Below, piece after piece: positions 18,815-42,769 of a stretch of DNA of 64,000 bases; the first letter of the stretch is position 1, and each line of letters opens with the position of its first letter. This DNA is from Scyliorhinus canicula (lineage: Eukaryota). The notes under the pieces are model-generated. The model had not been told where the DNA came from, ran no database searches, and saw only the letters and a list, made by a program, of their open reading frames with translations. Position numbers and translations under genes: made by a program. The DNA is taken from contig NC_052149.1 in the NCBI RefSeq assembly GCF_902713615.1, positions 3,276,623 through 3,340,622 of the forward strand, written 5' to 3'.

Positions 18815-21155
18815 GGGCGGGATTCTCCGACCCCACGCAGGGTCGGAGAATCGGCGAGCAGCGGCGTTATTTCCGCTCCCGCAGGGTTTTAAATCTCCCA
18901 CCGGCCAAAAACCGGCGTTGTGCAAACCCCACCAACAGCCTCTGAAAACAGCTGGCGCAGGCGGGATTTCATTTTTTTTTTAGTGTCCACAAATCTCCGG
19001 CCCGGATGGGCCGAAGTCCCGCCGACGTGGCCACGGGTCACGTCGGCGAAAATCACAGTTGCTTTAAAACGTCGTCAACCACTGATGATGGTTGACGCCG
19101 TTCAGTGTCGGGGGGGTGGGGGTGGGTTGCGGCATCGGGGGGGGGGGTTTGGGGGCAGCGGCGTGCAGAGAGGGGGGGCGACGGATGCCCGGGGCCAACG
19201 CACCGTCGCCCCCCCCCTCTGTACGCCGCTGCCCCCTACCCCAACCACCCCCCCACCTCCCTCCAATGCCCCTACCCCCCTCCCCACCACCCCTACCTCC
19301 CTCCAATGCCCCTACCCCCCTCCCCACCACCCCTCCTCCCCTCCAACGCCGCCCCCCCATCCCCCCTCCAACGCCGCCCCCCCATCTCTCGCAACGGCGC
19401 AACCCCCCCACCCTCAACGCCGCAACCCCCCCCCTCAACGTCGGTACCCACACACCCCCCCTCTCTCCTCCTCCCCCCCTTCCTTCCTCCGTTAGTGGGG
19501 GGGGGGGTGCGGCGTTGGAGTGGGGTAGGGGTGGCGAAGGGGGTAGGGGTGGTGAGGGGAGGGGGTTGGGGTAGGGGCAGCGGCGTGCAGAGGGGGGGCG
19601 ACGGTGCGTTGGCTCCGGGCATCCGGCGCCCCCCCCTCTCTGCCCCTGCTGCTGCCCCTACCCCAACCCCCCCTTCACCACCCCTACCCCCCTCCAACGC
19701 CGCACCCCCCCACCCCCCACTAACGCCGCACCCCCCCACCCCCCACTAACGCCGCACACCCCCCCCCCCCACTAATGAGGAAGGAAGGGGGGGGAGGAGG
19801 AAGGAAGGGATGAGGAGGAAGGAGGGGGGGGGTGTGGGTACCGGCCTTCAGAGGGAGGAGGGGTGTGGGTATCGGCCTTCAGAGGGAGGGGGACGGGGTG
19901 TGGGTACCGGCGTTGAGGGGGGGGGGACCCGGCGTTGAGAGGGGGGGATTGCGGCGTTGCGAGATGGGGGGGGCGGCGTTGGAGGGGGCGGCGTTGGAGG
20001 GTGGTGGGGGGGCGGCGTTGGAGGGGGGTAGGGGTGGTTGGGGTAGGGGGTAGCGGCGTACAGAGGGGGGGGGGCGACGGTGCGTTGGCCCCGGGAATCC
20101 ATCGCCCCCCCTCTCTGCACGCCGCTGCCCCCAACCCCCCCATGCCGGGTCGCTCTTCTCCCCCCCCCCCCCCCCCAATGCCGGGTCGCTCTTCTCTTCC
20201 CCCCCCCCCCCCATGCCGGGTCGCTCTTCTCCCCCCCCCCCCCATGCCGGGTCGCTCTTCACCCCCCCCCCCCCCCATGCCGGGTCGCTCTTCTCTCCCC
20301 CCCCCCCATGCCGGGTCGCTCTTCTCTCCCCCCCCCCATGCCGGGTCGCTCTTCTCCCCCCCCCCCCCCATGCCGGGTCGCTCTTCTCCCCCCCCCCCCC
20401 CCCCCCCATGTGCCGGGTCGCTCTTCTCCCCCCCACCCCACCCCCCTCCATGCCGGGTCGCTCTTCTCCCCCCCCCCCCCATGCCGGGTCGCTCTTCTCC
20501 CCCCCCCCCCCCAATGCCAGGTCGCTCTTCTCCCCCCCCCCCCCAATGCCAGGTCGCTCTTCTCCCTCCCCCCCATGCCGGGTCGCTCATCTCCCCCCCC
20601 CCCCCCCCCCCCCATGCCGGGTCGCTCTTCTCCCACCCCCCCCCCCCCCATGCCGGGTCGCTCTTCTCACCCCCCCCCCCCATGCCGGGTCGCTCTTCTC
20701 CCCCCCCCCCCCCCATGCCGGGTCGCTCTTCTCACCCCCCCCCCCCATGCCGGGTCGCTCTTCTCCCACCCCCCCCCCCCCATGCCGGGTCGCTCTTCTC
20801 ACCCCCCCCCCCCCCCCATGCCGGGTCGCTCTTCCCCACCCCCCCCCCCCCCCCATGCCGGGTCGCTCTTCTCACCCCCCCCCCCCCATGCCGGGTCGCT
20901 CTTCTCCCCTCCCCCCCCATGCCGGGTCGCTCTTCTCCCCCCACCCCACTGGGTCTCTCTCTCTCCCCACCACACAAACGCCGGGACTCGCCACTTCCGC
21001 AGCTGGAGAAACTGACGCCTATCGCATCAGTCCGCTGCTGGCCCTTCCGGGAACGGAGATTGCCAGCTTAAAAGAAGGCCCGGACGTCGGAGTCATGCAC
21101 ACCGCTTTTTCCCGCCGGAAATGGGCGTCACGTCGGTCCGCGGAGATTTTCGCCT
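18815..21155. mobile_element. GC-rich TIR element expanded by palindromes and a minisatellite
   Basis: Ends GGGCGGGATTCTCC / GGAGATTTTCGCCT; flanks CCT/CTT. Confidence 0.65.
20141..20945. repeat. Minisatellite CATGCCGGGTCGCTCTTCT(C)n, ~25 copies of ~30 bp
   Basis: Direct periodicity with variable poly-C spacers. Confidence 0.95.
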
Positions 21156-22795: not shown

Positions 22796-24225
22796 TCAAT
22801 TTATTTTTTCCCTGGTCTGTCTTCTCTGATTAATTTCTTCAGTGAGCTGTTTTCTGAAATTTAGCATGCGCATCACATCTTTCTGTTGGAGTATTTCTTC
22901 GATGGAAAGCAATTTAACATCATCCGGCAACCGATGTACTGATTTTCCATTCAGTGCTTCAAACATCTCCAGGACAGACGCCACCGAGTCTTCGGCCGTC
23001 GCGCGCGGGGTGGGGAAGATCCTGACGTTCCACAGGCTGAGACGGATTCTCCCGCTGTCTGAGAAAAGATGCTCTGAAATCTTCAGGCCCAGGCGCACGG
23101 CAGCCTCTCGGAAATCGAGGCCTAGCAGCCGCAGCTTATGAGTCTCGAGGGGCGAGGGGACTGTGTACTTGAGGTTGTCTCCTGTTCCGAACATCACAGT
23201 GACGAAGCCCCCTGGGATGCACAGCGAGTGCAGGAAGGTGTTGGGGGGTATGGTGGAATTCTCTCTTACGCAGCACCCACTGACAATGCTGTTGGTGCCG
23301 ACACAGCTGCCCGCGCCCAGCCGGGAGTACTCTATTACGCTGCCAGGAGACACATCGCACCCCGGCCCCACTAGGCTCTCAATGATGCATGGAACCTGGC
23401 CGCTACTCTCTGGGCAGAGCTGCCCGAGTCCACCAGGGTCAGACAGCAGCCCAAGATGTGCTCTCAGGGTCACGTCTGTTGTTAAATGGTGCAGATATTC
23501 CTGGGCAGTTCCCAGGTGGTAGAATTTGGAATTGTTCAGCATGGCCACATTAAGTGCAGTCCCTCGGAGACAATTGAAGATCTTCTGTCGATGTGCCACC
23601 AGCTGGTTCTCCTCCTGGCTAACATTGGCTGTGTTTTTGGTGTAATCTGATGTGGCACCAGGCCCCAGAGCCTGAAGGAAGTCACCGTAGGCATCAATCT
23701 CACAACCGAGGGTGCCAATCTCTCCAAGGATTGCCAGCAACCGCTTAGCTGTTGGGCGATCGAAGTAGTAGACGCTGTCCGTGTAGACAAAATCCATCTC
23801 AGTGTCCCCACCACTTTCGACACCGTGCCCTGCCCTGCAGACTGCCCCTGACTTTTGCATGGTCTCCACACTGGGTTTGTGCAGGAAGCGGTGACAGGCT
23901 TTATATTCCAGCTCCTTCTGAACACCCTGCACACGGCCTGGCTCCAATACAAAGACACCGTGCGTGGTGCCAATGGACAAGGAGGATGGATGAGCGAGGG
24001 CAGTGAAACCAGGCTTGTCGAAGCATATGGCCTCAGTCTCACTAACGCTGTAGAGCTCAATATCATCAGCACAGGTCACCAAGACCCCAGGCTTCATGTG
24101 GGTGGGGAAGTCGATGTACATCGCCAGTTTGAGCTCCAGCATTTGGTAAACAGGAATGCCCAGAGGCAGAGCAGTAAAAATCTTTCCCAGTGCACTGGCA
24201 CTCGGCAAACGTTGGCTATAGCCTC
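22796..24225 (-). CDS. FPGT: FPGT exon 4 (fucose-1-phosphate guanylyltransferase), 1430 nt to the stop codon
   Basis: ttttgcag|GAGGCTATAGC gives (G)GYSQRLPSASALGKIFTALPLG...CADDIELY...GTTHGVFVL...CEIDAYGDFLQALG; TGA at 22796-22798. Confidence 0.96.
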
Positions 24226-24309: not shown

Positions 24310-26315
24310 CTCCACCTCCTGCAGCCCCAACACCCCTCCTATCCCTGTAACTTCCTGCAGCCCCTACACCCCTCCCTATCTCTGTAACCTCCTCCAGCCC
24401 CTACACACCTCCCTATCTCTGTAACCTCCTCCAGACCCTACACCCCTCCCTATTGCTGCAACCTCCTCCAGACCCTACACCCCTAACTCTGTAACATCCT
24501 CCACTCTACACCCCTCCCTATCTCTGTAACCTCCTCCAGCCCCTACACACCTCCCTATCTCTGTAACCTCCTCCAGACCCTACACCCCTCCCTATTGCTG
24601 CAACCTCCTCCAGACCCTACACCCCTAACTCTGTAACATCCTCCACTCTACACCCCTCCCTATCTCTGTAACCTCCTCCAGACCCAGCACCCTCCCTCTC
24701 TCTGTAACCTCCTCCAGCCTCTACACCCCTCCCTATCTCTGCAACCTCCTCCAACCCCTACACCCCTCCTTATCTCTGATAAGCACAGTGAGCTAAACAG
24801 CTGGCTTGTAACGCAGAACAATACCAGCAGCGCGGGCTCAATTCCTGTACCAGCCTCCCCGAACAGGTGCCGGAATGTGGTGACTAGGGGCTTTTCACAG
24901 TAACCTCATTAAAACCTACTTGTGACAATAAGAAATTATGATTAACCACCTTCAGACACAACACCCTCCCTCTCTGTAACCTCCTCCTGCCCCTACACCC
25001 CCTCCCTATCTCTGTAACCTCCTCCTGCCCCTACACCCCCTCCCTATCTCTGTAACCTCCTCCAGCCCCTACACACCTCCCTATCTCTGTAACCTCCTCC
25101 AGACCCTACACCCCTCCCTATTGCTGCAACCTCCTCCAGACCCTACACCCCTAACTCTGTAACATCCTCCACTCTACACCCCTCCCTATCTCTGTAACCT
25201 CCTCCAGACCCAGCACCCTCCCTCTCTCTGTAACCTCCTCCAGCCTCTACACCCCTCCCTATCTCTGCAACCTCCTCCAACCCCTACACCCCTCCTTATC
25301 TCTGATAAGCACAGTGAGCTAAACAGCTGGCTTGTAACGCAGAACAATACCAGCAGCGCGGGCTCAATTCCTGTACCAGCCTCCCCCGAACAGGTGCCGG
25401 AATGTGGTGACTAGGGGCTTTTCACAGTAACCTCATTAAAACCTACTTGTGACAATAAGAAATTATGATTAACCACCTTCAGACACAACACCCTCCCTCT
25501 CTGTAACCTCCTCCTGCCCCTACACCCCCTCCCTATCTCTGTAACCTCCTCCTGCCCCTACACCCCCTCCCTATCTCTGTAACCTCCTCCAGACCCAACA
25601 CCCCTCCCTATCTCTGTAACCTCCTCCAGCCCCTACACCCCCTCCCTATCTCTGTAACCTCCTCCGGCCCCTATACCCCTCCCTATCTCTGTAACCTCCT
25701 CCAGACCCAACACCCCTCCCTATCTCTGTAACCTCCTCCAGCCCCTACACCCCTCCCTATCTCTGTAACCTCCTCCAGACCCTACACCCCCTCCCTATCT
25801 CTGTAACCTCCTCCAGCCCCTACACCCCCTCCCTATCTCTGTAACCTCCTCCAGACCCTACACCCCCTCCCTATCTCTGTAACCTCCTCCAGCCCCTACA
25901 CCCCCTCCCTATCTCTGTAACCTCCTCCAGCCCCTACACCCCCTCCCTATCTCTGTAACCTCCTCCAGCCTCTACACCCCTCCCTATCTCTGTAACCTCC
26001 TCCAGCCCCTACACCCCCTCCCTATCTCTGTAACCTCCTCCAGCCTCTACACCCCTCCCTATCTCTGTAACCTCCTCCATCCCCTACACCCCTCCCTATC
26101 TCTGTAACCTCCTCCAGACCCTACACCCCCTCCCTATCTCTGTAACCTCCTCCATCCCCTACACCCCTCCCTATCTCTGTAACCTCCTCCAGCCCCTACA
26201 CCCCCTCCCTATCTCTGTAACCTCCTCCAGACCCAACACCCCTCCCTATCTCTGTAACCTCCTCCAGCCCCTACACCCCCTCCCTATCTCTGTAACCTCC
26301 TCCAGCCCCTACACG
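24310..26315. repeat. Minisatellite, ~37-bp unit CCCTACACCCCTCCCTATCTCTGTAACCTCCTCCAGC, in FPGT intron 3, with two embedded SINE copies
   Basis: Direct periodicity; near-identical SINEs at ~24778-24943 and ~25304-25470. Confidence 0.95.
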
Positions 26316-27229: not shown

Positions 27230-28455
27230 TTTTGAAGAGGCGGCAAAGAAAATTGATGAGGGAAGGGCTGTGGATGTAGTTTATATGGACTTTAGTCAGT
27301 CGTTTGATTAGATTGGACAACGTCACACGTGACAGACTGGTACAAAAACTAAAATCGCATGATTTGGAATTTGGGTGGGCTGGCTAGATGGATACAGAAC
27401 TGGCTTGGTTATAGAAGATAGAGAGTAGCGATGGAACGGTGTTTTTCAGAATGGAGATCTGTAGTTAGTGGTGTTCCACAGGGATCCGTGCTGGGACCTC
27501 TGTTGTTTGTAGTATGTATAAATGATCTGGCGGAAAATGTGGGTGGTCTGATTAGTAGGTTTGCGGATGACACAAAGTTTCGCAGAGTTGCTGATAGTGC
27601 CGAGGATTATCAGAGGATACAACAGGATATAGATGGATTACAGACTTGGGCACAGAAATGGCAGATGGAGTTTAATCCGGACAAATAAAAGGTGATGCAT
27701 TTTGGAGGATCAAATCTAGGTATGAATTATACTGTAAATGGCAGGACTCTTAAGAATAGAGGGATCTGGGCGTGCAGGTCCACAGTTCCCTAAAAGTGGC
27801 AACAGGTGATTAAGAAGGCAAATGGCACGCTTGCCTTCATCAGCCGAGGCACTGAGTACAGGAGTTGGGAAATCATGTTGCAGCTGTATAAAACCTTGGT
27901 TAGGCCGCATTTGGAGCACTGCGTTCAATTCTGGTCACCACATTATCAGAAGGACATGGAAGCTTTGCAGAGAGGGCAAAGAAGATACACCAGGATGTTG
28001 CCTGGTCTCGAGGGTGTTGGCTATGAGGAGAGGTTGAATAAACTAGGATTGTTTTCATTGGAAAGACAGAAGCTGAGGGGAGACCTGATAGAGGTCTAAA
28101 AAATTATAAGAGGCACAGACAGGGTGGATAGTCAGAGGCTTTTTCCAAGGGTGGTGGTGTCAATTACAAGGGGGCAGAGGTTCAAGGTGAGATGGGGAAG
28201 GTTTAAGGGAGTTGTGCGGGGTAAGTTTTTCACGCAGAGAGCGGCGGGTGCATGGAACGCGCTGCCAGAGGATGTGGTGGAAGCCGGCACATTAGCAACA
28301 TTTAAGAGGCACCTGGCTGGATACATGAATAGGGAGGAAATAGGGATATGGACGTAGTTAAGGGCAGAATTAAACAAAAAAAGTTAGGACATCATGATGG
28401 GCTCAGACTTGGAGGGCCGAAGGGCCTGTTCCCAGGCTGTACTTTTATTTATTCT
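27230..28455 (+). mobile_element. CR1 LINE 3' fragment (decayed)
   Basis: SGVPQGSVLGPLLF...RFADDTK; [10 protein letters not shown]. Confidence 0.9.
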
Positions 28456-29559: not shown

Positions 29560-30250
29560 CGCAGACATTCTAGTTAAAGAGGAGTGTGAAATATTAAATG
29601 CAATAAGCATAGTGAGGGAGGAAACATCGGAGGGACTGGCAGCCTTGAAGGTGGACTAATCATCAGGGCTGGATGGTTTGTATCCCAGGCTGCTGAAGGA
29701 AGCCAGCAAGGAAGAAACAGATGCCCGGAGGATCATTTTGCAATCCCCAGAGGATCAGAGGTTTGGGAATGTTGCATCATTCTTCTAAAAGGGCGAGAGA
29801 GATTGACAGAAATCTTTAGGCCAGTCAGTCTGATTTTGGTGCTGGGCAAATTATTAGAGACAGGACAAGTTGTCACTTAGAAAGACACGGATTCATAGTC
29901 AGCATGATTCTGTTAGGGGAAGATCTGTCGTAACAACATTTTTTGAGGGAGAAACGCTAAGTATTGAGATTTCAGTATGACACTTGACAAGGTCGCATAT
30001 GGCAAACTGGCCAGAAAAGGTGAGAGCTCACAGGATAAAAGGAAGGTGGCAGGTTGGATCCAAAATTGGCTCAGTGACAAGAAACAAAGTGGATGTTTTT
30101 TGCGAATGGGAAACAGCTCCAAGTGGTGTTCCCCACGATTCAGCGTTGGGCCCTTTGTTGTCTATATTAATGATTTAGACTTGAATGTGGGAGGCATGAT
30201 TGGAAAATTTGCAGATGACACAAAAATTGGCAACGTAGTTGATGGTGAAG
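29560..30250 (+). mobile_element. Old CR1 RT fragment
   Basis: YINDLDLNVGGMIGKFADDTKIG. Confidence 0.8.
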
Positions 30251-30259
30251 CGGAAATAT

Positions 30260-31925
30260 AATTTCTCCTTCCTTGAGAGGATTGCTATCACTAAGGAGGT
30301 AGTGATGGGAAAGCTAATGGGGCTAAAGGTAGACAAGTCTCCTGGCCCTGATGGAATGCATCCCAGAGTGCTAAAAGAGATGGCTAGGGAAATTGCAGAT
30401 GCACTAGTGATAATTTACCGAAATTCACTAGACTCTGGGGTGGTCCCGGTGGATAGGAAATTAGCAAACGTGACGCCACTGTTTAAAAAAGCAGGTAGGC
30501 AGAAAGCAGGAAATTATAGGCCAGTGAGTTTAACTTCGGTAATAGGGAAGATGCTGGAATCTATCATCAAGGAAGAAATTGCGAGGCATCTGGATAGAAA
30601 TTGTCCCATTGGGCAGACGCAGCATGGGTTCGTAAAAGGCAGGTCATGCCTAACTAATTTAGTGGAATTTTTTGAGGACATTACCAGTGCAGTAGATAAT
30701 GGGGAGCCGATGGATGTGGTATATCTGGAGTTCCAGAAAGCCTTTGACAAGGTGCCACACAAAAGGTTGCTGCATAAAATAAAGATGCATGGCATTAAGG
30801 GTAAAGTAGTAGCATGGATAGAGGATTGGTTAATTAATAGAAAGCAAAGAATTGGGATAAATGGGTGTTTCTCTGGTTGGCAATCAGTAGCTAGTGGTGT
30901 CCCTCAGGGATCCGCGTTGGGCCCACAATTGTTCACAATTTACATTGATGATTTGGAGTTGGGGACCAAGGGCAATGTGTCCAAGTTTGCAGATGACACT
31001 AAGATGAGTGGTAAAGCGAAAAGTGCAGAGGATACTGGAAGTCTGCAGAGGGATTTGGATAGGTTAAGTGAATGGGCTCGGGTCTGGCAGATGGAATACA
31101 ATGTTGACAAATGTGAGGTTATCCATTTTGGTAGGAATAACAGCAAATGGGATTATTATTTAAACGATAAAATATTAAAGCATGCCGCTGTTCAGAGAGA
31201 CTTGGGTGTGCTAGTGCATGAGTCACAGAAGGTTGGTTTACAAGTGCAACAGGTGATTAAGAAGGTAAATGGAATTTTGTCCTTCATTGCTAGAGGGATG
31301 GAGTTTAAGACTAGGGAGGTTATGTTGCAATTGTATAAGGTGTTAGTGCGGCCACACCTGGAGTATTGTGTTCAGTTTTGGTCTCCTTACTTGAGAAAGG
31401 ACGTACTGGCGCTGGAGGGTGTGCAGAGGAGATTCACTAGGTTAATCCCAGAGCTGAAGGGGTTGGATTATGAGGAGAGGTTGAGTAGACTGGGACTGTA
31501 CTCATTGGAATTTAGAAGGATGAGGGGGGATCTTATAGAAACATTTAAAATTATGAAGGGAATAGATAGGATAGATGCGGGCAGGTTGTTTCCACTGGCG
31601 GGTGACAGCAGAACTAGGGGGCATAGCCTCAAAATAAGGGGAAGTAGATTTAGGACTGAGTTTAGGAGGAACTTCTTCACCCAAAGGGTTGTGAATCTAT
31701 GGAATTCCTTGCCCAGTGAAGCAGTTGAGGCCCCTTCATTACATGTTTTTAAGGTAAAGATAGATAGTTTTTTGAAGAATAAAGGGATTAAGGGTTATGG
31801 TGTTCGGGCCGGAAAGTGGAGCTGAGTCCACAAAAGATCAGCCATGATCTAATTGAATGGCGGAGCAGGCTCGAGGGGCCAGATGGCCTACTCCTGCTCC
31901 TAGTTCTTATGTTCTTATGTTCTTA
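30260..31925 (+). mobile_element. Young 5'-truncated CR1 LINE with an uninterrupted RT reading frame (ORF 30239..31825) and 3' tail
   Basis: DKSPGPDG, NYRPVSLTS, KAFDKVPH, GVPQGS, KFADD with no stops; tail (TTCTTATG)n. Confidence 0.95.
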
Positions 31926-32744: not shown

Positions 32745-33940
32745 ATAGAAACATAGAAAATACAAACAGGAAGAGGCCATTCAGCCCTTCGAGCCTGCTC
32801 CGCCACTCATTATCATAGCTGATCATCCAACTCAATAGCCTAATCCCACTTTCCCCCATATCCTTTGATCCCTTTAGCCCCAAATGTTCTATCTAACTCC
32901 TTCTTGAAACCATTCAATGTTGTGGCCTCAACTGCTTCCTGTAGCAGCGAATTCCACTGGCCGATCATTCTCTGGGAGATGAAATTTCTCATCTCAGTCC
33001 TAAAAGATTCACCCGTAACCTTAGACTGACGCCTGGTTCTGGACGCCCCCACCACTGGGAACATCTCAAGACATCCCAGCTCCTGTACTCGAATCCTCTC
33101 GGAATGAAGGCCAACATACCATTTGCCTCTTTACCGCCTGCTGTATCTGCATGCTTACCTTCAGTGACTGGTGTACGAGGACACCCAAGTTTCGTGGCAC
33201 ATTCCCCTCTCCTAATTTATGGCCATTCAGATAATAGTCTGCCTTCTCGTATTTGCTACCAAAGTGGATAACCTCGCATTTCTCCAAATTATACTGCATC
33301 TGCCATTTATTTGCCCACTCACTCAACTTGTCCAAATCACACTGAAGGATCTCTGCATCCTCCTCACAGCCCACCCTCCCACCCAACTTTGTCTCATCGG
33401 TAAATTTGGGGATATTTCCTTTAATTCCCACATCCAAATCATTAATATATATTGTGAATTGCTTGCTAGCACCTAGCCTTATGGTACCCCCACTAGTCAC
33501 TGCCTGCAAATTTGGAAAAAACTGTTAATTCCTACTCTTTCCTCCCCATCTGCCAACCAGATTTCTATCCATCTCAATACACTACCCTCAATCCTATGCA
33601 CTTTAATTTTACACGCTAAACTCTTCTGTGGGACCTTGTTGAAAGCTTTCTAAAAGTCAAAATAAACCACATCCACTGACTCCACCTCGTCAATTCTACT
33701 AGTTACATCTTCAAAGAATTCCAGTAGATTTGTCAAATAGATTTGTCCCTTTCGTAAATCCATGCTGAATCTGTCTGATTCGATCATTGTTTTCCAAGTT
33801 CTCTGCTGTGAAAGCTTTGAGAATAGATTCCTGCATTTTGTCCACTCCCAACGTCAGGCTATAATTCCGTTTCCTCTCTACCTCCGTTTTTAAGTGGGGT
33901 TACAGTAGCTACCCTCCAATTAGGAGGACTAAACGGCCTG
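32745..33940 (-). mobile_element. CR1 LINE fragment (decayed)
   Basis: FTIYINDLDVGI...KCEVIHFGS; WRVATVTPL. Confidence 0.85.
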
Positions 33941-34190: not shown

Positions 34191-34358
34191 CAATTTTTGG
34201 CCCCAAAGGATCAGCAAACACGTGATACCGTACACCGAGGGGAAGCTCATTGCTCTGCAGCTTGTTGCTGATCTGCTGCTCGAACACCAGCTCTTGTCTT
34301 CCATCAGCAGCTGTAATGACCACAATGTCCCAGAACTCACCAGGAGTTACCTCCTTTC
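34191..34358 (-). CDS. FPGT: FPGT exon 2 (168 nt)
   Basis: gcccag|GAAAGGAG...AAAATTG|gtgagt; (G)[28 protein letters not shown]...[18 protein letters not shown]. Confidence 0.95.
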
Positions 34359-34852
34359 CTGGGCAAAAAAACAAAAATGATCTTAAGAGGAAGCTCATGA
34401 TTCGTTAACGGCCGTGTTCCAAAGGCCAGGAGTCAGGACACACATCAGCAACCAGGAAAACAAACCAAATCACCTTGCTCATATGAGAGCACAGGAATGA
34501 GGGGCAGGAGTCACCCATCCAGCCCCTTGCGTCTACTCTGCCATCGGATAGGTTCATGGCCAATTGGGTTGAGGATCCATCTCCACTTTCCTGCCCGCTC
34601 CCCTTTGCTTCGAATCCCTGTTTGTCCAACATTGCCTTCACTGCGCTCTGGGGAAGGGAATTCCAAAGACTAATGACCCTTTGAGAGAATAAAAAATTGC
34701 TTCTCATCTCCGTCTTAAATAGCCCAAATTTTCAAACTGTGCCCTTTTGTTCCAGATTACCCACAAGAAAAACCATCCACCCCGCAATCCACCCCGTCAC
34801 ATTCCCACAGCTACTGTTTCACTAAAATCACCCTTTGTTCCGCTAAAGAACT

Positions 34853-37800
34853 GGGGGAGGGGGGGGGGGGGGGGGGGTACCAGTCTCTGGGGGGAGGGGG
34901 GGTTTACCTCTGAGTCTCTGGGGGGGGGGGGTGGTTACCTCAGTCTCTGGGGGGAGGGGGGGTTTACCTCTGAGTCTCTGGGGGGGAGGGTACCTCAGTG
35001 TCTGGGGGGGGGGGAGGGTACCTCAGTGTCTGGGGGGGGGAGGTACCTCAGTGTCTGGGGGGGGGGGAGGTACCTCAGTGTCTGGGGGGGGGGGAGGTAC
35101 CTCAGTGTCTGGGGGGGAGGGTACCTTAGTCTCTGGGGGGGGAGGGTACCTCAGTCTCTGGGGGGGAGGGTACATCAGTCTCTGGGGGGGGAGGGTACTT
35201 CAGTCTCTGGGGGGGGAGGGTACCTCAGTCTCTGGGGGGGGGGGAGGGTACCTCAGTCTCTGGGGGGAGGGGGATTACCCCTCAGTCTCTGGGGGGGAGG
35301 GTACATCAGTCTCTGGGGGGGGGAGGGTACATCAGTCTCTGGGGGGGGGGAGGGTACATCAGCCTCTGGGGGGGGAGGGTACCTCAGCCTCTGGGGGGGG
35401 GGGGGACCTCAGCCTCGGGGGGGGGAGGGTACCTCAGCCTCTGGGGGGGGAGGGTACCTCAGCCTCTGGGGGGGGGAGGGTACCTCAGCCTCTGGGGGGG
35501 GAGGGTACCTCAGCCTCTGGGGGGGGAGGGTACCTCAGCCTCTGGGGGGGAGGGTACCTCAGCCTCTGGAGGGGGAGGGTACCTCAGCCTCTGGGGGGGA
35601 GGGTACCCTCAGCCTCTGGGGGGGGAGGGTACCTCAGCGTCTGGGGGGGGGAGGGTACTCAGCCTCTTGGGGGGGGTACCTCAGCCTCTGGGGGGGGGGG
35701 TACCTCAGCCTCTGGGGGGGGAGGGTACCTCAGCCTCTGGGGGGGGAGGGTACCTCAGCCTCTGGGGGGGGAGGGTACCTCAGCCTCTGGGGGGGGAGGG
35801 TACCTCAGCCTCTGGGGGGGAGGGTACCTCAGCCTCTGGGGGGGGAGGGTACCTCAGCCTCTGGGGGGGGAGGGTACCTCAGCCTCTGGGGGGGGAGGGT
35901 ACCTCAGCCTCTGGGGGGGGAGGGTACCTCAGCCTCTGGGGGGGGAGGGTACCTCAGCCTCTGGGGGGGGAGGGTACCTCAGCCTCTGGGGGGGGAGGGT
36001 ACCTCAGCCTCTGGGGGGGGAGGGTACCTCAGCCTCTGGGGGGGGAGGGTACCTCAGCCTCTGGGGGGGGAGGGTACCTCAGCCTCTGGGGGGGAGGGTA
36101 CCTCAGCCTCTGGGGGGGGAGGGTACCTCAGCCTCTGGGGGGGGAGGGTACCTCAGCCTCTGGGGGGGGAGGGTACCTCAGCCTCTGGGGGGGGAGGGTA
36201 CCTCAGCCTCTGGGGGGGGAGGGTACCTCAGCCTCTGGGGGGGGAGGGTACCTCAGCCTCTGGGGGGGGAGGGTACCTCAGCCTCTGGGGGGGGAGGGTA
36301 CCTCAGCCTCTGGGGGGGGAGGGTACCTCAGCCTCTGGGGGGGGAGGGTACCTCAGCCTCTGGGGGGGGAGGGTACCTCAGCCTCTGGGGGGGGAGGGTA
36401 CCTCAGCCTCTGGGGGGGGAGGGTACCTCAGCCTCTGGGGGGGGAGGGTACCTCAGCCTCTGGGGGGGGAGGGTACCTCAGCCTCTGGGGGGGGAGGGTA
36501 CCTCAGCCTCTGGGGGGGGAGGGTACCTCAGCCTCTGGGGGGGGAGGGTACCTCAGCCTCTGGGGGGGGAGGGTACCTCAGCCTCTGGGGGGGGAGGGTA
36601 CCTCAGCCTCTGGGGGGGGAGGGTACCTCAGCCTCTGGGGGGGGAGGGTACCTCAGCCTCTGGGGGGGGAGGGTACCTCAGCCTCTGGGGGGGGAGGGTA
36701 CCTCAGCCTCTGGGGGGGGAGGGTACCTCAGCCTCTGGGGGGGGAGGGTACCTCAGCCTCTGGGGGGGGGAGGGTACCTCAGCCTCTGGGGGGGGAGGGT
36801 ACCTCAGCCTCTGGGGGGGGAGGGTACCTCAGCCTCTGGGGGGGGAGGGTACCTCAGCCTCTGGGGGGGGAGGGTACCTCAGCCTCTGGGGGGGGAGGGT
36901 ACCTCAGCCTCTGGGGGGGGGAGGGTACCTCAGCCTCTGGGGGGGGGAGGGTACCTCAGCCTCTGGGGGGGGGAGGGTACCTCAGCCTCTGGGGGGGGAG
37001 GGTACCTCAGCCTCTGGGGGGGGGAGGGTACCTCAGCCTCTGGGGGGGGGGGGTACCTCAGCCTCTGGGGGGGGGAGGGTACCTCAGCCTCGGGGGGGGG
37101 GAGGGTACCTCAGCCTCTGGGGGGGGAGGGTACCTCAGCCTCTGGGGGGGGGGGGTACCTCAGCCTCGGGGGGGGGAGGGTACCTCAGCCTCTGGGGGGG
37201 GGAGGGTACCTCAGCCTCTGGGGGGGGAGGGTACCTCAGCCTCTGGGGGGGGGGAGGGTACCTCAGCCTCTGGGGGGGGAGGGTACCTCAGCCTCTGGGG
37301 GGGGGGGGTACCTCAGCCTCTGGGGGGGGAGGGTACCTCAGCCTCTGGGGGGGGAGGGTACCTCAGCCTCTGGGGGGGGAGGGTACCTCAGCCTCTGGGG
37401 GGGGAGGGTACCTCAGCCTCTGGGGGGGGGAGGGTACCTCAGCCTCTGGGGGGGGAGGGTACCTCAGCCTCTGGGGGGGGAGGGTACCTCAGCCTCTGGG
37501 GGGGGAGGGTACCTCAGCCTCTGGGGGGGGAGGGTACCTCAGCCTCTGGGGGGGGAGGGTACCTCAGTCTCTGGGGGGGGAGGGTACCTCAGTCTCTGGG
37601 GGGGGAGGGTACCTCAGTCTCTGGGGGGGGAGGGTACCTCAGTCTCTGGGGGGGGAGGGTACCTCAGTCTCTGGGGGGGGAGGGTACCTCAGTCTCTGGG
37701 GGGGGAGGGTACCTCAGTCTCTGGGGGGGGAGGGTACCTCAGTCTCTGGGGGGGGAGGGTACCTCAGTCTCTGGGGGGGGAGGGTACCTCAGTCTCTGGG

Positions 37801-40800
37801 GGGGGAGGGTACCTCAGTCTCTGGGGGGGGAGGGTACCTCAGTCTCTGGGGGGGGAGGGTACCTCAGTCTCTGGGGGGGGAGGGTACCTCAGTCTCTGGG
37901 GGGGGGAGGGTACCTCAGTCTCTGGGGGGGGAGGGTACCTCAGTCTCTGGGGGGGAGGGTACCTCAGTCTCTGGGGGGGGGAGGGTACCTCAGTCTCTGG
38001 GGGGGGAGGGTACCTCAGTCTCTGGGGGGGGAGGGTACCTCAGTCTCTGGGGGGGGAGGGTACCTCAGTCTCTGGGGGGGGAGGGTACCTCAGTCTCTGG
38101 GGGGGGAGGGTACCTCAGTCTCTGGGGGGGGAGGGTACCTCAGTCTCTGGGGGGGGAGGGTACCTCAGTCTCTGGGGGGGGAGGGTACCTCAGTCTCTGG
38201 GGGGGAGGGTACCTCAGTCTCTGGGGGGGGAGGGTACCTCAGTCTCTGGGGGGGGAGGGTACCTCAGTCTCTGGGGGGGGAGGGTACCTCAGTCTCTGGG
38301 GGGGGAGGGTACCTCAGTCTCTGGGGGGGGAGGGTACCTCAGTCTCTGGGGGGGGAGGGTACCTCAGTCTCTGGGGGGGGAGGGTACCTCAGTCTCTGGG
38401 GGGGAGGGTACCTCAGTCTCTGGGGGGGGAGGGTACCTCAGTCTCTGGGGGGCGAGGGTACCTCAGTCTCTGGGGGGGGGAGGGTACCTCAGTCTCTGGG
38501 GGGGAGGGTACCTCAGTCTCTGGGGGGGGAGGGTACCTCAGTGTCTGGGGGGGGAGGGTACCTCAGTCTCTGGGGGGGAGGGTACCTCAGGCTCTGGGGG
38601 GGGAGGGTACCTCAGTCTCTGGGGGGGAGGGTACCTCAGTCTCTGGGGGGGGAGGGTACCTCAGTCTCTGGGGGGGGAGGGTACCTCAGTCTCTGGGGGG
38701 GGAGGGTACCTCAGTCTCTGGGGGGGGGGGGGTACCTCAGTCTCTGGGGGGGAGGGTACCTCAGTCTCTGGGGGGGGAGGGTACCTCAGTCTCTGGGGGG
38801 GAGGGTACCTCAGTCTCTGGGGGGGGAGGGTACCTCAGTCTCTGGGGGGGGAGGGTACCTCAGTCTCTGGGGGGGGAGGGTACCTCAGTCTCTGGGGGGG
38901 GAGGGTACCTCAGTCTCTGGGGGGGGAGGGTACCTCAGTCTCTGGGGGGGGAGGGTACCTCAGTCTCTGGGGGGGGAGGGTACCAGTATCTGGGGGGGAG
39001 GGTACCTCAGTCTCTGGGGGGGGGGAGGGTACCTCAGTCTCTGGGGGGGGGGGAGGGTACCTCAGTCTCTGGGGGGGAGGGTACCTCAGTCTCTGGGGGG
39101 GAGGGTACCTCAGTCTCTGGGGGGGAGGGTACCTCAGTCTCTGGGGGGGGGGGAGGGTACCTCAGTCTCTGGGGGGGGGGGGAGGGTACCTCAGTCTCTG
39201 GGGGGGAGGGTACCTCAGTCTCTGGGGGGGGGAGGGTACCTCAGTCTCTGGGGGGGGGGGGTACCTCAGTCTCTGGGGGGGGGGAGGGTACCTCAGTCTC
39301 TGGGGGGGGGAGGGTACCTCAGTCTCTGGGGGGGGGGGGAGGGTACCTCAGTCTCTGGGGGGGGGGAGGGTACCTCAGTCTCTGGGGGGGGGGGGGTACC
39401 TCAGTCTCTGGGGGGGGGAGGGTACCTCAGTCTCTGGGGGGGGGGGGGGGGAGGGTACCTCAGTCTCTGGGGGGAGGGTACCTCAGTCTCTGGGGGGGGG
39501 TACCTCAGTGTCTGGGGGGGGTACCTCAGTGTCTGGGGGGGGTACCTCAGTGTCTGGGGGGGGGGTACCTCAGTGTCTGGGGGGGGTACCTCAGTGTCTG
39601 GGGGGGGTACCTCAGTGTCTGGGGGGGGTACCTCAGTGTCTGGGGGGGGTACCTCAGTGTCTGGGGGGGGGGGTACCTCAGTGTCTGGGGGGGGGGGTAC
39701 CTCAGTGTCTGGGGGGGGGGGGTACCTCAGTGTCTGGGGGGGGGGTACCTCAGTGTCTGGGGGGGGGAGGGTACCTCCGTCTCTGGGGGGGGGGAGGGTA
39801 CCTCCGTCTCTGGGGGGGGGGGGGAGGGTACCTCCGTCTCTGGGGGGGGGAGGGTACCTCAGTCTCTGGGGGGGGGGGGGAGGGTACCTCCGTCTCTGGG
39901 GGGGGGGGGAGGGTACCTCCGTCTCGGGGGGGGGGGGAGGGTACCTCCGTCTCTGGGGGGGGGTACCTCCGTCTCTGGGGGGGGGGGTACCTCCGTCTCT
40001 GGGGGGGGGGGTACCTCCGTCTCTGGGGGGGGGGGTACCTCCGTCTCTGGGGGGGGGGGTACCTTCGTCTCTGGTGGGGGGGGTACCTCCGTCTCTGGGG
40101 GGGGGGGGTACCTCCGTCTCTGGGGGGGGGGGTACCTCCGTCTCTGGGGGGGGGGAGGGTACCTCCGTCTCTGGGGGGGGGGGGGAGGGTACCTCCGTCT
40201 CTGGGGGGGGGGGGGAGGGTACCTCCGTCTCTGGGGGGGGGGGAGGGTACCTCCGTCTCTGGGGGGGGGGGGGAGGGTACCTCCGTCTCTGGGGGGGGGG
40301 GGGGGGTACCTCCGTCTCTGGGGGGGGGGGGGGGGTACCTCCGTCTCTGGGGGGGGAGGGTACCTCCGTCTCTGGGGGGGGGGAGGGTACCTCCGTCTCT
40401 GGGGGGGGGGGGGAGAGTACCTCCGTCTCTGGGGTGGGGGGGAGGGTACCTCCGTCTCTGGGGGGGGGGGAGGGTACCTCCGTCTCTGGGGGGGGGGGAG
40501 GGTACCTCCGTCTCTGGGGGGGGGAGAGTACCTCCGTCTCTGGGGGGGGGGAGGGTACCTCCGTCTCTGGGGGGGGGGAGGGTACCTCCGTCTCTGGGGG
40601 GGGGGTACCTCAGTGTCTGGGGGGGGGGTACCTCTGTCTCTGGGGGGGGGGGAGGGTACCTCCGTCTCTGGGGGGGGGAGGGTACCTCCGTCTCTGGGGG
40701 GGGGAGGGTACCTCCGTCTCTGGGGGGGGGAGGGTACCTCCGTCTCTGGGGGGGGGAGGGTACCTCCGTCTCTGGGGGGGGGGGGAGGGTACCTCGTCTC

Positions 40801-41827
40801 TGGGGGGGGGGGGGGGAGGGTACCTCCGTCTCTGGGGGGGGGGAGGGTACCTCCGTCTCTGGGGGGGGGGGGAGGGTACCTCCGTCTCTGGGGGGGGGAG
40901 AGGGTACCTCCGTCTCTGGGGGGGGGGAGAGGGTACCTCCGTCTCTGGGGGGGGGGGGAGGGTACCTCCGTCTCTGGGGGGGGGGGAGGGTACCTCCGTC
41001 TCTGGGGGGGGGGAGGGTACCTCCGTCTCTTGGGGGGGGGGAGGGTACCTCCGTCTCTGGGGGGGGGAGGGTACCTCCGTCTCTGGGGGGGGGAGGGTAC
41101 CTCCGTCTCTGGGGGGGGGAGGGTACCTCAGTCTCTGGGGGGGGGAGGGTACCTCAGTCTCTGGGGGGGGAGAGGGTACCTCAGTCTCTGGGGGGGGGAG
41201 GGTACCTCAGTCTCTGGGGGGGGGAGGGTACCTCAGTCTCTGGGGGGGGGAGGGTACCTCAGTCTCTGGGGGGGGAGGGTACCTCAGTCTCTGGGGGGGG
41301 AGGGTACCTCAGTCTGTGGGGGGGGAGAGGGTACCTCAGTCTCTGGGGGGGGGGGAGGGTACCTCAGTCTCGGGGGGGGGAGGGTACCTCAGTCTCGGGG
41401 GGGGGAGGGTACCTCAGTCTCGGGGAGGGTACCTCAGTCTCGGGGGGGGGAGGGTACCTCAGTCTCGGGGGGGGGAGGGTACCTCAGTCTCGGGGGGGGG
41501 GGAGGGTACCTCAGTCTCGGGGGGGGGGGTACCTCAGTCTCGGGGGGGGGGGTACCTCAGTCTCGGGGGGGGGGGGGGTACCTCAGTCTCGGGGGGGGGG
41601 GGTACCTCAGTCTCGGGGGGGGGGGGGTACCTCAGTCTCGGGGGGGGGGGGAGGGTACCTCAGTCTCTGGGGGGGGAGGGTACCTTAGTCTCTGGGGGGG
41701 GGGAGGGTACCTCAGTCTCGGGGGGGGGGGGGGGAGGGTACCTCAGTGTCTGGGGGGAGGGGGTTACCTCTCAGTCTCTGGGGGGGAGGGGACCTCAGTC
41801 TCTGGGGGGAGGGGGGGGGGGGGGTAC
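34853..41827. repeat. ~7-kb minisatellite, ~23-bp unit G(7-10)AGGGTACCTCAG[T/C]CTCT, ~300 copies, filling FPGT intron 1
   Basis: Direct periodicity; GGTACC in almost every unit; array abuts the exon-1 donor. Confidence 0.97.
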
Positions 41828-41894
41828 CTCTCAGTTTCTGGAAGTTTCTGAGGCGCCTCCGGCTCGCGCTCCGAATCCTTTCCGCGTCCGTCAT
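41828..41894 (-). CDS. FPGT: FPGT exon 1 (67 coding nt, MTDAERIRSASRRRLRNFQKLR)
   Basis: ATG at 41894; donor GAG|gtaccc; resembles human ...TQRKLRRFSELRG; exon sum 67+168+93+1430=1758 nt is in frame. Confidence 0.88.
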
Positions 41895-42408
41895 CGTCCA
41901 GGGTCAGCGACAGCTTCTCAGTGCGCCTGCGCTGGCGGGGGCGTGGCCATGGGGAAGGGGGCGGGGACGCAGGGAAGGGGCGGGGCCCCTGGGAATGGGG
42001 CTGGCCCATTGTGTGGGGGCCGAGCGTTGGGGGCGGGGCTGTTAAAGGGGGAGGGTCCTTTGGGTGGGGCTGGGCGTGTCGGTACAGTGCGCCTGCGCGG
42101 GCGGGGCGGGGCCGTGGGGAAAGGGGCGGGGCCGTGGGGAAGGGGGCGGGCAGCGCTGGGGGGGCGCAAGCATTTGGGAAAGGGGCAAGGGGGCGGGACT
42201 GTGTGGAAGGAGGCGGGACTGTGTGGAAGGGGGCGGGGCTGTGTGGAAAGAGGCGGGACTCTGTGGAAGGGGGCGGGGCTGTGTGGATGGAGGTGGGGCT
42301 GTGTGGATGGGGGCGGGGCCCTAGGGGAGTGGCCTGTCGTGTCGGTACCGCCCAGCTCAGTGCGCCTGCGCGGGCGCTGCTCCGTTTCCACAGCGACCGA
42401 CGCCGGAC
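41895..42408. promoter_or_regulatory. Bidirectional GC-rich promoter shared by FPGT and LRRIQ3
   Basis: Three NRF1-type TGCGCCTGCGC motifs (41922, 42088, 42361), many GGGGCGGGG boxes, YY1-like CATGGCGGC at 42408; divergent ATGs ~515 bp apart. Confidence 0.8.
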
Positions 42409-42450
42409 ATGGCGGCTCCTCGGAACAGCCCCAAGGTGGAGCGCAGCAAG
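42409..42450 (+). CDS. LRRIQ3: Candidate LRRIQ3 coding exon 1 (MAAPRNSPKVERSK), GC donor; alternative GT donor after 42435
   Basis: gacATGG context at the promoter edge; AAG|gcgagt or AAG|gtggag, both phase 0 and compatible with the open exon at 55655; no protein homology support. Confidence 0.5.
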
Positions 42451-42458
42451 GCGAGTGT

Positions 42459-42700
42459 GGCAGCGGGAACCCCGCCCGATAGACCCCCGGCAGCGGGAAC
42501 CCCGCCCGATAGACCCCCGGGGCAGCGGGAACCCCGCCCGATAGACCCCCCGGGGCAGCGGGAACCCCTCCCCCGGGGCAGCGGGAACCCCGCCCGATAG
42601 ACCCCCGGGGCAGCGGGAACCCCTCCCCCCGGGCAGCGGGAACCCCGCCCGATAGACCCACGGGGCAGCGGGAACCCCGCCCGATAGACCCCCCGGCAGT
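42459..42700. repeat. Minisatellite GGCAGCGGGAACCCCGCCCGATAGACCCCC, ~8 units
   Basis: Direct periodicity. Confidence 0.9.
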
Positions 42701-42769
42701 GGGAATGCCCCGCCCCTCACCCTCACCCCACCCCCAATTTTTCCAGCCCAGCAGCATGGCTAACACACA

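What the first reader, a model, noticed from the sequence alone, without database searches (positions are those of the whole stretch)
34853..41840. FPGT intron 1 is a ~7-kb array of ~300 copies of its own 5' splice site
Seen: on the FPGT sense strand exon 1 ends ...CAGAAACTGAGAG|GTACCCCC, and the repeat unit starting immediately after reads CAGAGACTGAG|GTACCCTCCCCCCC. The unit therefore looks like the last ~13 exon bases plus the donor, amplified in tandem. The -3..+6 nine-mer GAG|GTACCC of the true donor recurs in most units across all variant blocks. A few units (e.g. GAGAG|GTAACC near 41765 and GAG|GTAACC near 34935) are closer to U1 consensus than the native site. The array fills ~7.0 of the 7.47-kb intron. 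Known: this 9-mer is the U1 snRNA pairing site. Inference: the pre-mRNA offers hundreds of sequence-identical competing donors. The frame running into the array stops at 41712, so most downstream choices would create NMD substrates. The array could act as a length-dependent splicing rheostat, a U1-loading (telescripting) platform, or a natural test of cap-proximal donor selection.
Basis: partly seen in the sequence, partly recalled or inferred. Interest (0 to 1): 0.85.

Follow-up and report, generated by a model that had tools for sequence, protein, structure and literature searches.

The report
Splice-donor minisatellite filling catshark FPGT intron
In the small-spotted catshark, the end of FPGT exon 1 plus its splice donor has been copied about 270 times in tandem, filling 93% of the first intron. 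This is a very large example of a known kind of exon-boundary minisatellite, and it is probably tolerated rather than useful.

Summary
The window is Scyliorhinus canicula. FPGT lies on the minus strand: exon 1 is 41894-41828, the donor is GAG|GTACCC, intron 1 is 7,469 nt, and exon 2 starts at 34358. A 25-bp array of about 270 units (34853-41840) starts in phase with the last 13-15 exon bases. The exact donor 9-mer occurs 249 times on the sense strand, against 0.9 expected.

The origin claim is supported and now has a direction. The same exon tail and donor (GAG|GTACCG or GTGCCC) are present in sevengill shark, sturgeon and chimaera, none of which has a donor array.

New points:
- Each unit also carries a C-tract plus CAG, which resembles an acceptor.
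- One stronger pseudo-donor (41767) is in frame at +60 nt.
- Sevengill shark and sawfish carry unrelated C-rich arrays at the same intron start.

This is a known kind: F7 IVS7, IFI6, CBS, and the amphioxus "mirages". In the mammalian cases only the first donor, or the first few, are used.

No evidence supports a rheostat or telescripting role. I could not obtain transcript data.

Earlier notes from this scan report similar donor arrays at other loci in this genome (LAMTOR1 and others). I did not check those notes.

The parts
41828..41894 (-). FPGT exon 1 coding part (ATG at 41894; 22 codons plus the first base of Gly23)
   Evidence: Translation matches the N-terminus of P0001, which is 100% identical to S. 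canicula FPGT
41822..41830 (-). Authentic donor 9-mer GAG|GTACCC (G+1 at 41827). It is weak: 5 of 9 consensus positions
   Evidence: The same donor, with at most one change, is present in Heptranchias, Huso and Callorhinchus
34853..41840 (-). 25-bp minisatellite of about 270 units. The founder unit is the last 13 nt of exon 1 plus the donor and a C tract. Each unit is CAG-AGACTGAG|GTACCC-T-C(n)
   Evidence: TRF; unit parsing; 9-mer count
41362..41630 (-). Variant block E (CCGAGACTGAG, 12 units), which destroys the CAG acceptor-like site
39887..41100 (-). Variant block C (ACGGAG, about 38 units)
39503..39748 (-). Variant block D (AGACACTGAG, period about 21, uninterrupted C tract)
37562..39481 (-). 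Variant block A (AGAGACTGAG, about 74 units)
35382..37537 (-). Variant block B (AGAGGCTGAG, 84 units, the most homogeneous block)
41762..41770 (-). Pseudo-donor GAG|GTAACC (6 of 9 consensus positions), 60 nt downstream of the true donor and in frame. Its use would insert 20 residues and keep the reading frame
41712..41714 (-). First in-frame stop (TGA) when exon 1 is read into the array. Every pseudo-donor beyond it gives a premature stop
34902..34970 (-). Degenerate distal edge units with the best pseudo-donors (GTAAAC at 34967 and 34907, GTAACC at 34938), about 550-610 nt upstream of the exon 2 acceptor
34359..34852 (-). Non-repetitive remainder of intron 1, ending in a U-rich tract plus CAG acceptor
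34191..34358 (-). FPGT exon 2 (donor TTG|GTGAGT)

Best explanation
This is an exon-boundary ('mirage'-type) minisatellite.

Origin. In the catshark lineage a segment of about 25-35 bp was duplicated in tandem. It comprised the last 13-15 nt of FPGT exon 1, the ancient weak donor GAG|GTACCC, and the C-rich start of intron 1. The duplication probably arose by slippage between two short CCAG repeats that still flank the array. Slippage and unequal exchange then expanded it to about 270 units (7 kb), which left ordered variant blocks and degenerate edges.

Site. The array sits at a place that is prone to C-rich arrays in elasmobranchs generally.

Splicing (inferred). The spliceosome uses the 5'-most, cap-proximal donor at 41827. 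The other roughly 265 GT sites are silent pseudo-sites, or they give transcripts with a premature stop that nonsense-mediated decay removes. At most, the site at 41767 may yield a minor in-frame +20-residue isoform.

Function. The array itself has no selected function.

Shown here: the anatomy, the exon-to-array direction of origin, the age of the donor, the reading-frame consequences, and the known precedent class. Inferred: which donors are actually used, and neutrality.
For: Array and 9-mer statistics.

Homology of the units to the exon tail. The exon tail and the edge units share 12 of 13 bases plus GT, in phase.

The exon is the ancestral copy. The encoded residues F18, R22 and G23 are invariant across 11 vertebrate FPGT proteins. 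The intron position, phase 1 and the donor GAG|GT[A/G]CC[C/G] are shared with Heptranchias, Huso and Callorhinchus, which lack donor arrays.

Array dynamics. Blocks E, A, C, D, A, B with heterogeneous edges are the usual signature of minisatellite turnover. CCAG is present at both array boundaries.

The first donor makes the protein. The annotated 585-aa protein is reproduced only when the first donor is used.

Most other choices are non-productive. The stop lies at 41714-41712, and the sense strand of the array has 72-81 stops per frame.

No structural masking. The RNA is unstructured (z = +0.8), so position is the only visible difference between the true site and the pseudo-sites.

Precedent (PMC1557585). 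In F7 IVS7, LMNB2 and PDGFA only the first donor is used. In IFI6 and CBS the first donor plus the next two are used. In F7 minigenes, pseudo-sites with consensus values up to 91 did not compete.

Precedent (PMC3087553). Amphioxus 'mirages' do not disturb normal splicing.
Against: No transcript data could be obtained, so use of the first donor rests on an annotated protein and on analogy.

The precedents have 5-26 copies and mostly involve internal exons. None tests 270 sites spread over 7 kb, where the last pseudo-donors are about 550 nt from the acceptor and the true donor is 7.5 kb away.

Classical cis-competition experiments (my own knowledge: Reed and Maniatis 1986; Eperon et al. 1993) favour the donor nearest the acceptor when several are occupied by U1.

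C-rich arrays persist at this exact site in three elasmobranch lineages. That is more than a purely neutral, short-lived repeat would predict.
Confidence: 0.7

Rival explanations
1. The C-rich repeat itself is the selected feature and the donors are passengers. A long C-rich sense-strand tract directly downstream of the weak FPGT exon 1 donor is maintained in elasmobranchs. It might act as an intronic platform for poly(C)-binding proteins that helps the weak donor. Alternatively it might act through DNA structure next to the promoter, since the template strand is G-rich.
For: Heptranchias has a 1.35-kb array of 19-31-bp C-rich units starting about 20 nt after the donor. Pristis has about 950 bp of (CCCTC)n starting about 50 nt after the donor. 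The catshark array starts at the donor. C content is 50-80% with strongly negative GC skew in all three, and the units are unrelated. In both fetched elasmobranch loci this is the only large array inside the gene. The + strand of the catshark array has 4.6 canonical G4 motifs per kb, against 0.4 per kb elsewhere in the window.
Against: Huso uses the same donor with a 437-nt intron that is not C-rich. Callorhinchus has no array in intron 1. C-rich and G-rich minisatellites are common in this window in both orientations, and 22% of the window is tandem arrays. A locus that once acquires an array may simply keep one. There is no binding or expression evidence.
Confidence: 0.12
2. The array is a length-dependent splicing rheostat or a U1-loading (telescripting or transcription-enhancing) platform that tunes FPGT output.
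For: 249 identical U1-pairing 9-mers lie on the sense strand within 7 kb of the promoter. The RNA is single-stranded and accessible. Nearly all alternative donors lead to a premature stop, so any leakage would lower output.
Against: Intron 1 contains no AATAAA or ATTAAA, so there is no cryptic poly(A) site nearby to suppress. Each site pairs with only 5 contiguous U1 positions. Mutations hit the donor 9-mer about as often as the rest of the unit: 13 events in 9 positions against 13 in 7. That none of the donor variants has spread is not significant (0 of 13 against 3 of 13). Relatives express the gene from the same donor without such an array. Published arrays of this type are silent (PMC1557585).
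Confidence: 0.1
3. Piecemeal internal splicing. Every unit has a pyrimidine tract plus CAG followed 8 nt later by a donor. Donors and acceptors three or more units apart could therefore splice within the array. That would shorten the intron stepwise and always regenerate an array-like sequence.
For: There are 251-271 sites with eight or more pyrimidines followed by AG, 266 GGTA donors, and 213 CTGAG branch-like motifs in intron 1.
Against: The tracts are almost pure C, whereas the real FPGT acceptors are U-rich. The donor and the next tract overlap, with only about 17 nt from GT to the next AG, so U1 and U2AF would exclude each other (inference). Joining exon 1 to any array acceptor adds 8 nt and shifts the frame. 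The CAG is not followed by GT, so the defining feature of recursive splice sites is absent.
Confidence: 0.05
4. Assembly artefact. The array does not exist, or is much shorter or longer than shown.
For: Long homopolymer-rich tandem arrays are hard to assemble and polish. C-tract lengths vary from unit to unit, and part of that variation may be sequencing noise.
Against: There are no N runs. The variant blocks are ordered and the edges are degenerate, unlike a collapsed or inflated repeat. Independent assemblies of two other elasmobranchs show arrays at the same site. The annotated CDS span of 19,099 bp in the public record equals the span in the window.
Confidence: 0.03

Closest known systems
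Human F7 intron 7 37-bp VNTR (Borensztajn et al. 2006, PMC1557585)
   Same: The first monomer spans the exon-intron boundary, so the authentic donor is followed by identical pseudo-donors. The donor is sub-optimal. The pseudo-sites are functional when tested, but only the most upstream site is used.
   Different: F7 has 5-9 copies of 37 bp, against about 270 copies of 25 bp. F7 contributes 4 exon bases to the unit, against 13-15 here. F7 involves an internal exon, whereas this is the first exon. The F7 units carry no acceptor-like site. Donor usage was measured in F7 and not here.
Human IFI6 (6-16) intron 2 minisatellite and CBS intron 13 minisatellite (as summarised in PMC1557585)
   Same: These are boundary-spanning arrays in which the first one or two pseudo-donors are used alongside the true one. 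The catshark site at 41767 (+60 nt, in frame, stronger) is the obvious analogue.
   Different: They have 25 pseudo-sites (IFI6) or 15-20 repeats (CBS). Here only one pseudo-donor is in frame and a stop follows 113 nt into the array.
Amphioxus 'mirage' minisatellites (Adh3 and globin genes; PMC3087553)
   Same: They are tandem duplications spanning exon-intron boundaries. They occur at several loci of one genome, show concerted evolution with divergent edge units, and do not disturb normal splicing.
   Different: They have few copies (3-6 in the globins) and often longer units (150-160 bp). They include acceptor-side boundaries. Nothing approaches 7 kb.
C-rich arrays at the start of FPGT intron 1 in Heptranchias perlo (L003:1607-2951) and Pristis pectinata (L002:1667-2616)
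   Same: Same gene, same intron end, same strand bias (C-rich sense strand), and kilobase scale.
   Different: The units are unrelated and contain no copy of the exon tail or donor. These arrays start 20-50 nt after the donor rather than at it.
Vertebrate recursive splice sites / RS exons
   Same: Acceptor-like and donor-like signals lie close together deep in a long intron.
   Different: The CAG is followed by AGACTGAG, not by GT, so no donor is regenerated at the junction. The 8-nt spacer would shift the frame.

Membership tests
Exon-boundary ('mirage', F7 IVS7-type) minisatellite | Head-to-tail array of units of about 10-100 bp | tested here: met
   Period 25, 272 copies, 93% matches
Exon-boundary ('mirage', F7 IVS7-type) minisatellite | The first monomer spans the exon-intron boundary, so the unit contains the exon tail plus the splice signal | tested here: met
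   The exon tail CAGAAACTGAGAG|GTA aligns in phase with units CAGAGACTGAG(AG)|GTA. Outgroups show that the exon copy is ancestral.
Exon-boundary ('mirage', F7 IVS7-type) minisatellite | The donor sequence is reiterated identically in the intron | tested here: met
   248 further exact copies of the -3..+6 9-mer
Exon-boundary ('mirage', F7 IVS7-type) minisatellite | The authentic (most upstream) donor is the one used in mature mRNA | tested here: inconclusive
   The annotated 585-aa protein and the conserved N-terminus require the first donor. No transcript reads were available.
Exon-boundary ('mirage', F7 IVS7-type) minisatellite | Copy number varies between alleles (VNTR) | not testable with these tools
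   Only one haplotype is held. The DNA of the public record could not be fetched.
FPGT (fucose-1-phosphate guanylyltransferase) gene | Fucose pyrophosphorylase domain and orthology to vertebrate FPGT | tested here: met
   PF07959, E = 2e-136. 100% identity to S. canicula FPGT and 85% to Mustelus. A divergent LRR gene lies upstream, as in the other loci.
Recursive splice site / RS exon | An acceptor immediately followed by GT, so that a donor is regenerated after the first step | tested here: not met
   Array acceptor-like sites read CAG|AGA, CAG|AGG or CAG|ACA.
U1 telescripting element | U1 sites protect against nearby cryptic polyadenylation signals | tested here: not met
   There is no AATAAA or ATTAAA anywhere in intron 1. 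U1 binding itself cannot be tested here.

The most novel reading that the evidence does not exclude
Donor-carrying minisatellites are a systematic feature of the catshark genome and not one-off accidents. Unchecked notes from this scan list LAMTOR1, PDCD11, TAF5L, an MHC alpha2 exon and others. The 5' end of FPGT intron 1 has held a C-rich array since the shark-ray ancestor. Together these would point to one of two things. Either a lineage-specific process seeds tandem duplication at transcribed 5' splice sites, or selection keeps C-rich or U1-binding arrays next to weak donors in very large genomes. FPGT would be the extreme case.
Probability: 0.15. Interest if true: 0.75.

Novelty: new member of a known kind. 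Interest (0 to 1): 0.5.

Why it matters
The array is a natural experiment at a scale no minigene has reached. About 265 pseudo-donors, most of them identical to the true site, are spread over 7 kb behind a first exon. The true site is the one farthest from the acceptor.

Two published rules for choosing among competing donors make opposite predictions here. One is 'most upstream wins' (F7 oriented scanning, cap-proximal preference). The other is 'nearest the acceptor wins'. Existing catshark RNA-seq could decide between them.

The comparison across cartilaginous fishes also shows how such an array is born: an old weak donor next to a repeat-prone C-rich tract gets captured into the repeating unit.

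If the other donor arrays noted in this genome are real, a genome-wide census would be worth more than this single locus.

Tried and rejected
- Transcript evidence. A search with the first 90 residues of the protein found no catshark partial proteins or alternative N-termini. Exact look-ups of the exon 2 ORF and of the exon 1 read-through ORF found nothing.
- Closer relatives. Mustelus, Heterodontus and the catshark's own record returned gene spans only and no DNA, because the files were too large. The Stegostoma isoform was not on record. The age of the donor capture within Carcharhiniformes could therefore not be set.
- Selection on the donor inside units. Independent mutation events are as frequent in the 9-mer as upstream of it. 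The lack of spread of donor variants is not significant. I make no claim from it.
- RNA structure masking the pseudo-sites. Rejected, because the fold is no better than shuffled sequence.
- Recursive splicing and telescripting. Defining features are not met.
- The catshark unit in other species' loci. No match.
- Literature on C-rich intronic enhancers. The hits concerned 'G/C-rich' isochores and were not relevant. The role of poly(C)-binding proteins rests on my own knowledge only.
- Literature on shark minisatellites. Nothing relevant.
- MaxEntScan could not be run. Donor strength comes from U1 match counts, duplex energies, and a rough weight matrix built from frequencies I recalled from memory.
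Full report
IDENTITY OF THE LOCUS. The large minus-strand ORF at 22796-24208 is 100% identical to fucose-1-phosphate guanylyltransferase of Scyliorhinus canicula (P0001, 585 aa) and 85% identical to that of Mustelus asterias. P0001 carries the fucose pyrophosphorylase domain PF07959. Walking P0001 along the window gives four coding exons on the minus strand: 41894-41828, 34358-34191, 26853-26761 and 24225-22796. All three introns are phase 1, and the exons reproduce the protein exactly. The span equals the 19,099-bp CDS span of the public record. Intron 1 is 7,469 nt.

THE ARRAY. Tandem Repeats Finder reports a single array at 34866-41809 with period 25, 272 copies and 93% matches. Parsing the sense strand gives 270 units of the form CAG-AGACTGAG|GTACCC-T-C(n), with modal spacing 25. 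The true donor 9-mer GAGGTACCC occurs 249 times, always on the sense strand and only inside 34988-41830. Shuffles give 0.9 expected and a maximum of 4. There are 258 KpnI sites. Including the founder unit, the array fills 93% of the intron. The window has no N.

The units fall into ordered blocks. Starting from the exon they are E (12 units), A (8), C (about 38), D (12), A (about 74) and B (84). Heterogeneous units sit at both edges. This is the normal signature of local expansion and homogenisation in a minisatellite, and it argues against an assembly artefact.

ORIGIN AND ITS DIRECTION. The array continues in phase into the exon. The exon tail CAGAAACTGAGAG|GTA differs by one base from the edge unit at 41767 (CAGAGACTGAGAG|GTA). 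The distal edge units at 34967 and 34907 keep the same ...CAGAG|GTAA form. The interior units have lost one AG.

The exon copy is the ancestral one, for two reasons:
- It encodes F-Q-K-L-R-G, in which F18, R22 and G23 are invariant across 11 vertebrate FPGT proteins.
- The same intron position, phase and donor are found in species without any donor array: GAG|GTACCG in the sevengill shark Heptranchias and in the sturgeon Huso, and GAG|GTGCCC in the chimaera Callorhinchus.

The catshark unit is absent from all four fetched loci. Both array boundaries carry CCAG: TTCCAG|AAACTG in the exon and CCCCCAG|TTCTTT at the distal end. This fits a first duplication by slippage between short direct repeats, though that step is inference.

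SPLICING SIGNALS.
- The true donor matches 5 of 9 consensus positions (-2 to +3). Its U1 duplex energy is -5.7 kcal/mol, against -11.6 for the consensus (the weight matrix there uses frequencies I recalled from memory). It is a weak site, and it is equally weak in the relatives.
- Four pseudo-sites are better: GTAACC at 41767 and 34938, and GTAAAC at 34967 and 34907 (6 of 9).
- Reading from exon 1 into the array, the first stop is TGA at 41714-41712. The sense strand has 72-81 stops per frame.
- Of the sites upstream of that stop, 41793 (GTCCCC, +34 nt by subtraction) and 41741 (+86 nt) shift the frame. The site at 41767 is +60 nt, in frame, and would insert 20 residues while recreating the ...LRG|KEV junction. 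Every other site would give a premature stop upstream of two or three exon junctions. By the usual rule (my own knowledge) that makes it an NMD substrate.
- The RNA of exon 1 plus the first 330 nt of the array folds no better than shuffled sequence (z = +0.8). Nothing but position distinguishes the true site.

Each unit is also acceptor-like. There are 251-271 sites with eight or more pyrimidines followed by AG, mostly CCCCAG|AGA or CCCCAG|AGG, and 213 CTGAG branch-like motifs. These tracts are almost pure C, whereas the three real FPGT acceptors are U-rich. The tract overlaps the donor of the same unit. The CAG is not followed by GT, so these are not recursive splice sites.

COMPARATIVE RESULT. 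In Heptranchias, intron 1 (4.9 kb) starts with a 1.35-kb array of 19-31-bp C-rich units, beginning about 20 nt after the donor. In the sawfish Pristis, about 950 bp of (CCCTC)n begins about 50 nt after the donor. C content is 62-80% there and 50-54% in the catshark, with strongly negative GC skew in all three. The units are unrelated and lack the donor.

Callorhinchus has no array in intron 1, though it has C-rich arrays just upstream of the ATG. Huso has a plain 437-nt intron.

Array density in these loci is about 0.1-0.2 per kb. Three independent arrays starting within 50 nt of the same donor are therefore very unlikely (rough estimate). Either the site has held a C-rich array since the shark-ray ancestor, or it regenerates one. 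The catshark novelty is that the repeating unit came to include the exon tail and the donor.

WHAT IS KNOWN. The class is described.
- Borensztajn et al. 2006 (PMC1557585) studied the human F7 intron 7 VNTR, whose first 37-bp monomer spans the exon-intron boundary. They list IFI6 (6-16; 25 pseudo-sites), CBS (15-20 repeats), LMNB2 and PDGFA as further cases.
- In F7, LMNB2 and PDGFA only the authentic site is used. In IFI6 and CBS the next two are used as well.
- In F7 minigenes the pseudo-sites are functional, but the most upstream site always wins. Pseudo-sites with a consensus value up to 91 do not compete.
- By hand calculation from a table I recalled from memory, the catshark true site scores about 67 and its best pseudo-sites about 78. 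That table reproduces two of the paper's four values, so these numbers are rough.
- In amphioxus such boundary-spanning arrays are called 'mirages'. They occur at several loci and do not disturb normal splicing (PMC3087553).
- This scan's own notes list further donor arrays in the same genome: LAMTOR1 (about 136 copies, followed up), PDCD11, TAF5L, an MHC alpha2 exon and others. I did not verify them.

MECHANISM AND ALTERNATIVES.
- Best reading (about 0.7): a tolerated mirage-type minisatellite in which the cap-proximal first donor is used. The rest are silent or cleared by NMD, with a possible minor +20-residue isoform from 41767.
- The weak point is scale. No precedent tests 270 sites over 7 kb with the true donor farthest from the acceptor, and the classical proximity rule (my own knowledge) predicts the opposite choice.
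- The C-rich tract may be the maintained feature, with the donors as passengers (about 0.12). The three-lineage comparison supports this. The sturgeon and chimaera weaken it, as does the general abundance of such arrays; 22% of this window is tandem arrays.
There is no poly(A) hexamer in intron 1, no detectable extra conservation of the donor within units, and the donor works without an array in relatives.
- Piecemeal internal splicing (about 0.05) and assembly artefact (about 0.03) are unlikely, for the reasons given in the Rival explanations section.

VERDICT. The origin claim is confirmed and now has a direction. The functional claims are unsupported. This is a new and very large member of a known kind. 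Its interest lies in being a natural test of donor choice and one instance of what may be a genome-wide pattern in the catshark.

Noticed in passing
L003:1607-2951 (Heptranchias perlo) and L002:1667-2616 (Pristis pectinata): Both relatives carry kilobase-scale C-rich sense-strand arrays at the very start of FPGT intron 1. The units are unrelated to the catshark unit and contain no donor. The site appears to have been repeat-prone, or constrained to be C-rich, since the shark-ray ancestor.
   Followed up: partly
window 34747-42482, + strand: All three + strand frames are open across the array, giving ORFs of 2,271-2,313 aa that are glycine-rich. This is a composition artefact: the antisense unit has no stop triplet. 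Gene finders could miscall them.
   Followed up: partly
window 41937-42319 and 42459-42715: The FPGT/LRR-gene bidirectional promoter region (71% G+C) is itself built of tandem repeats. There are several copies (6.7 in the largest TRF array) of a 20-bp unit containing a GC box (CCCCGCCCC), and a 32/55-bp repeat further upstream.
   Followed up: no
window 24314-26314: FPGT intron 3 (2,535 nt) is about 80% filled by 37/38-bp arrays that are G-rich on the sense strand. They start about 450 nt after the exon 3 donor and end about 90 nt before the exon 4 acceptor. They are neither boundary-derived nor polarised to the donor end.
   Followed up: partly
window 57605-60711: A 3.1-kb array of a 25-bp unit (CCCGGACAGGGACCGACAAGGCCGG) lies on the LRR-gene side. 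No exon was evident directly upstream of it.
   Followed up: partly
window 19245-20947 and 4627-5321: Further minisatellites: a 32-33-bp unit with a C14 run downstream of FPGT, and a 31-bp unit at 4.6 kb. Tandem arrays make up about 22% of the 64-kb window.
   Followed up: no
window 30239-31825 (+), also 27431-28357 and 33066-33509: Retrotransposon remnants lie in FPGT intron 2. One is a 528-aa ORF with a reverse transcriptase domain (RVT_1, E = 5e-32).
   Followed up: partly
window 41362-41630: In the 12-unit block nearest the exon, the CAG of the unit has become CGAG. This removes the acceptor-like AG context while keeping the donor. Whether that matters for keeping exon 1 from splicing into the array is unknown.
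   Followed up: no
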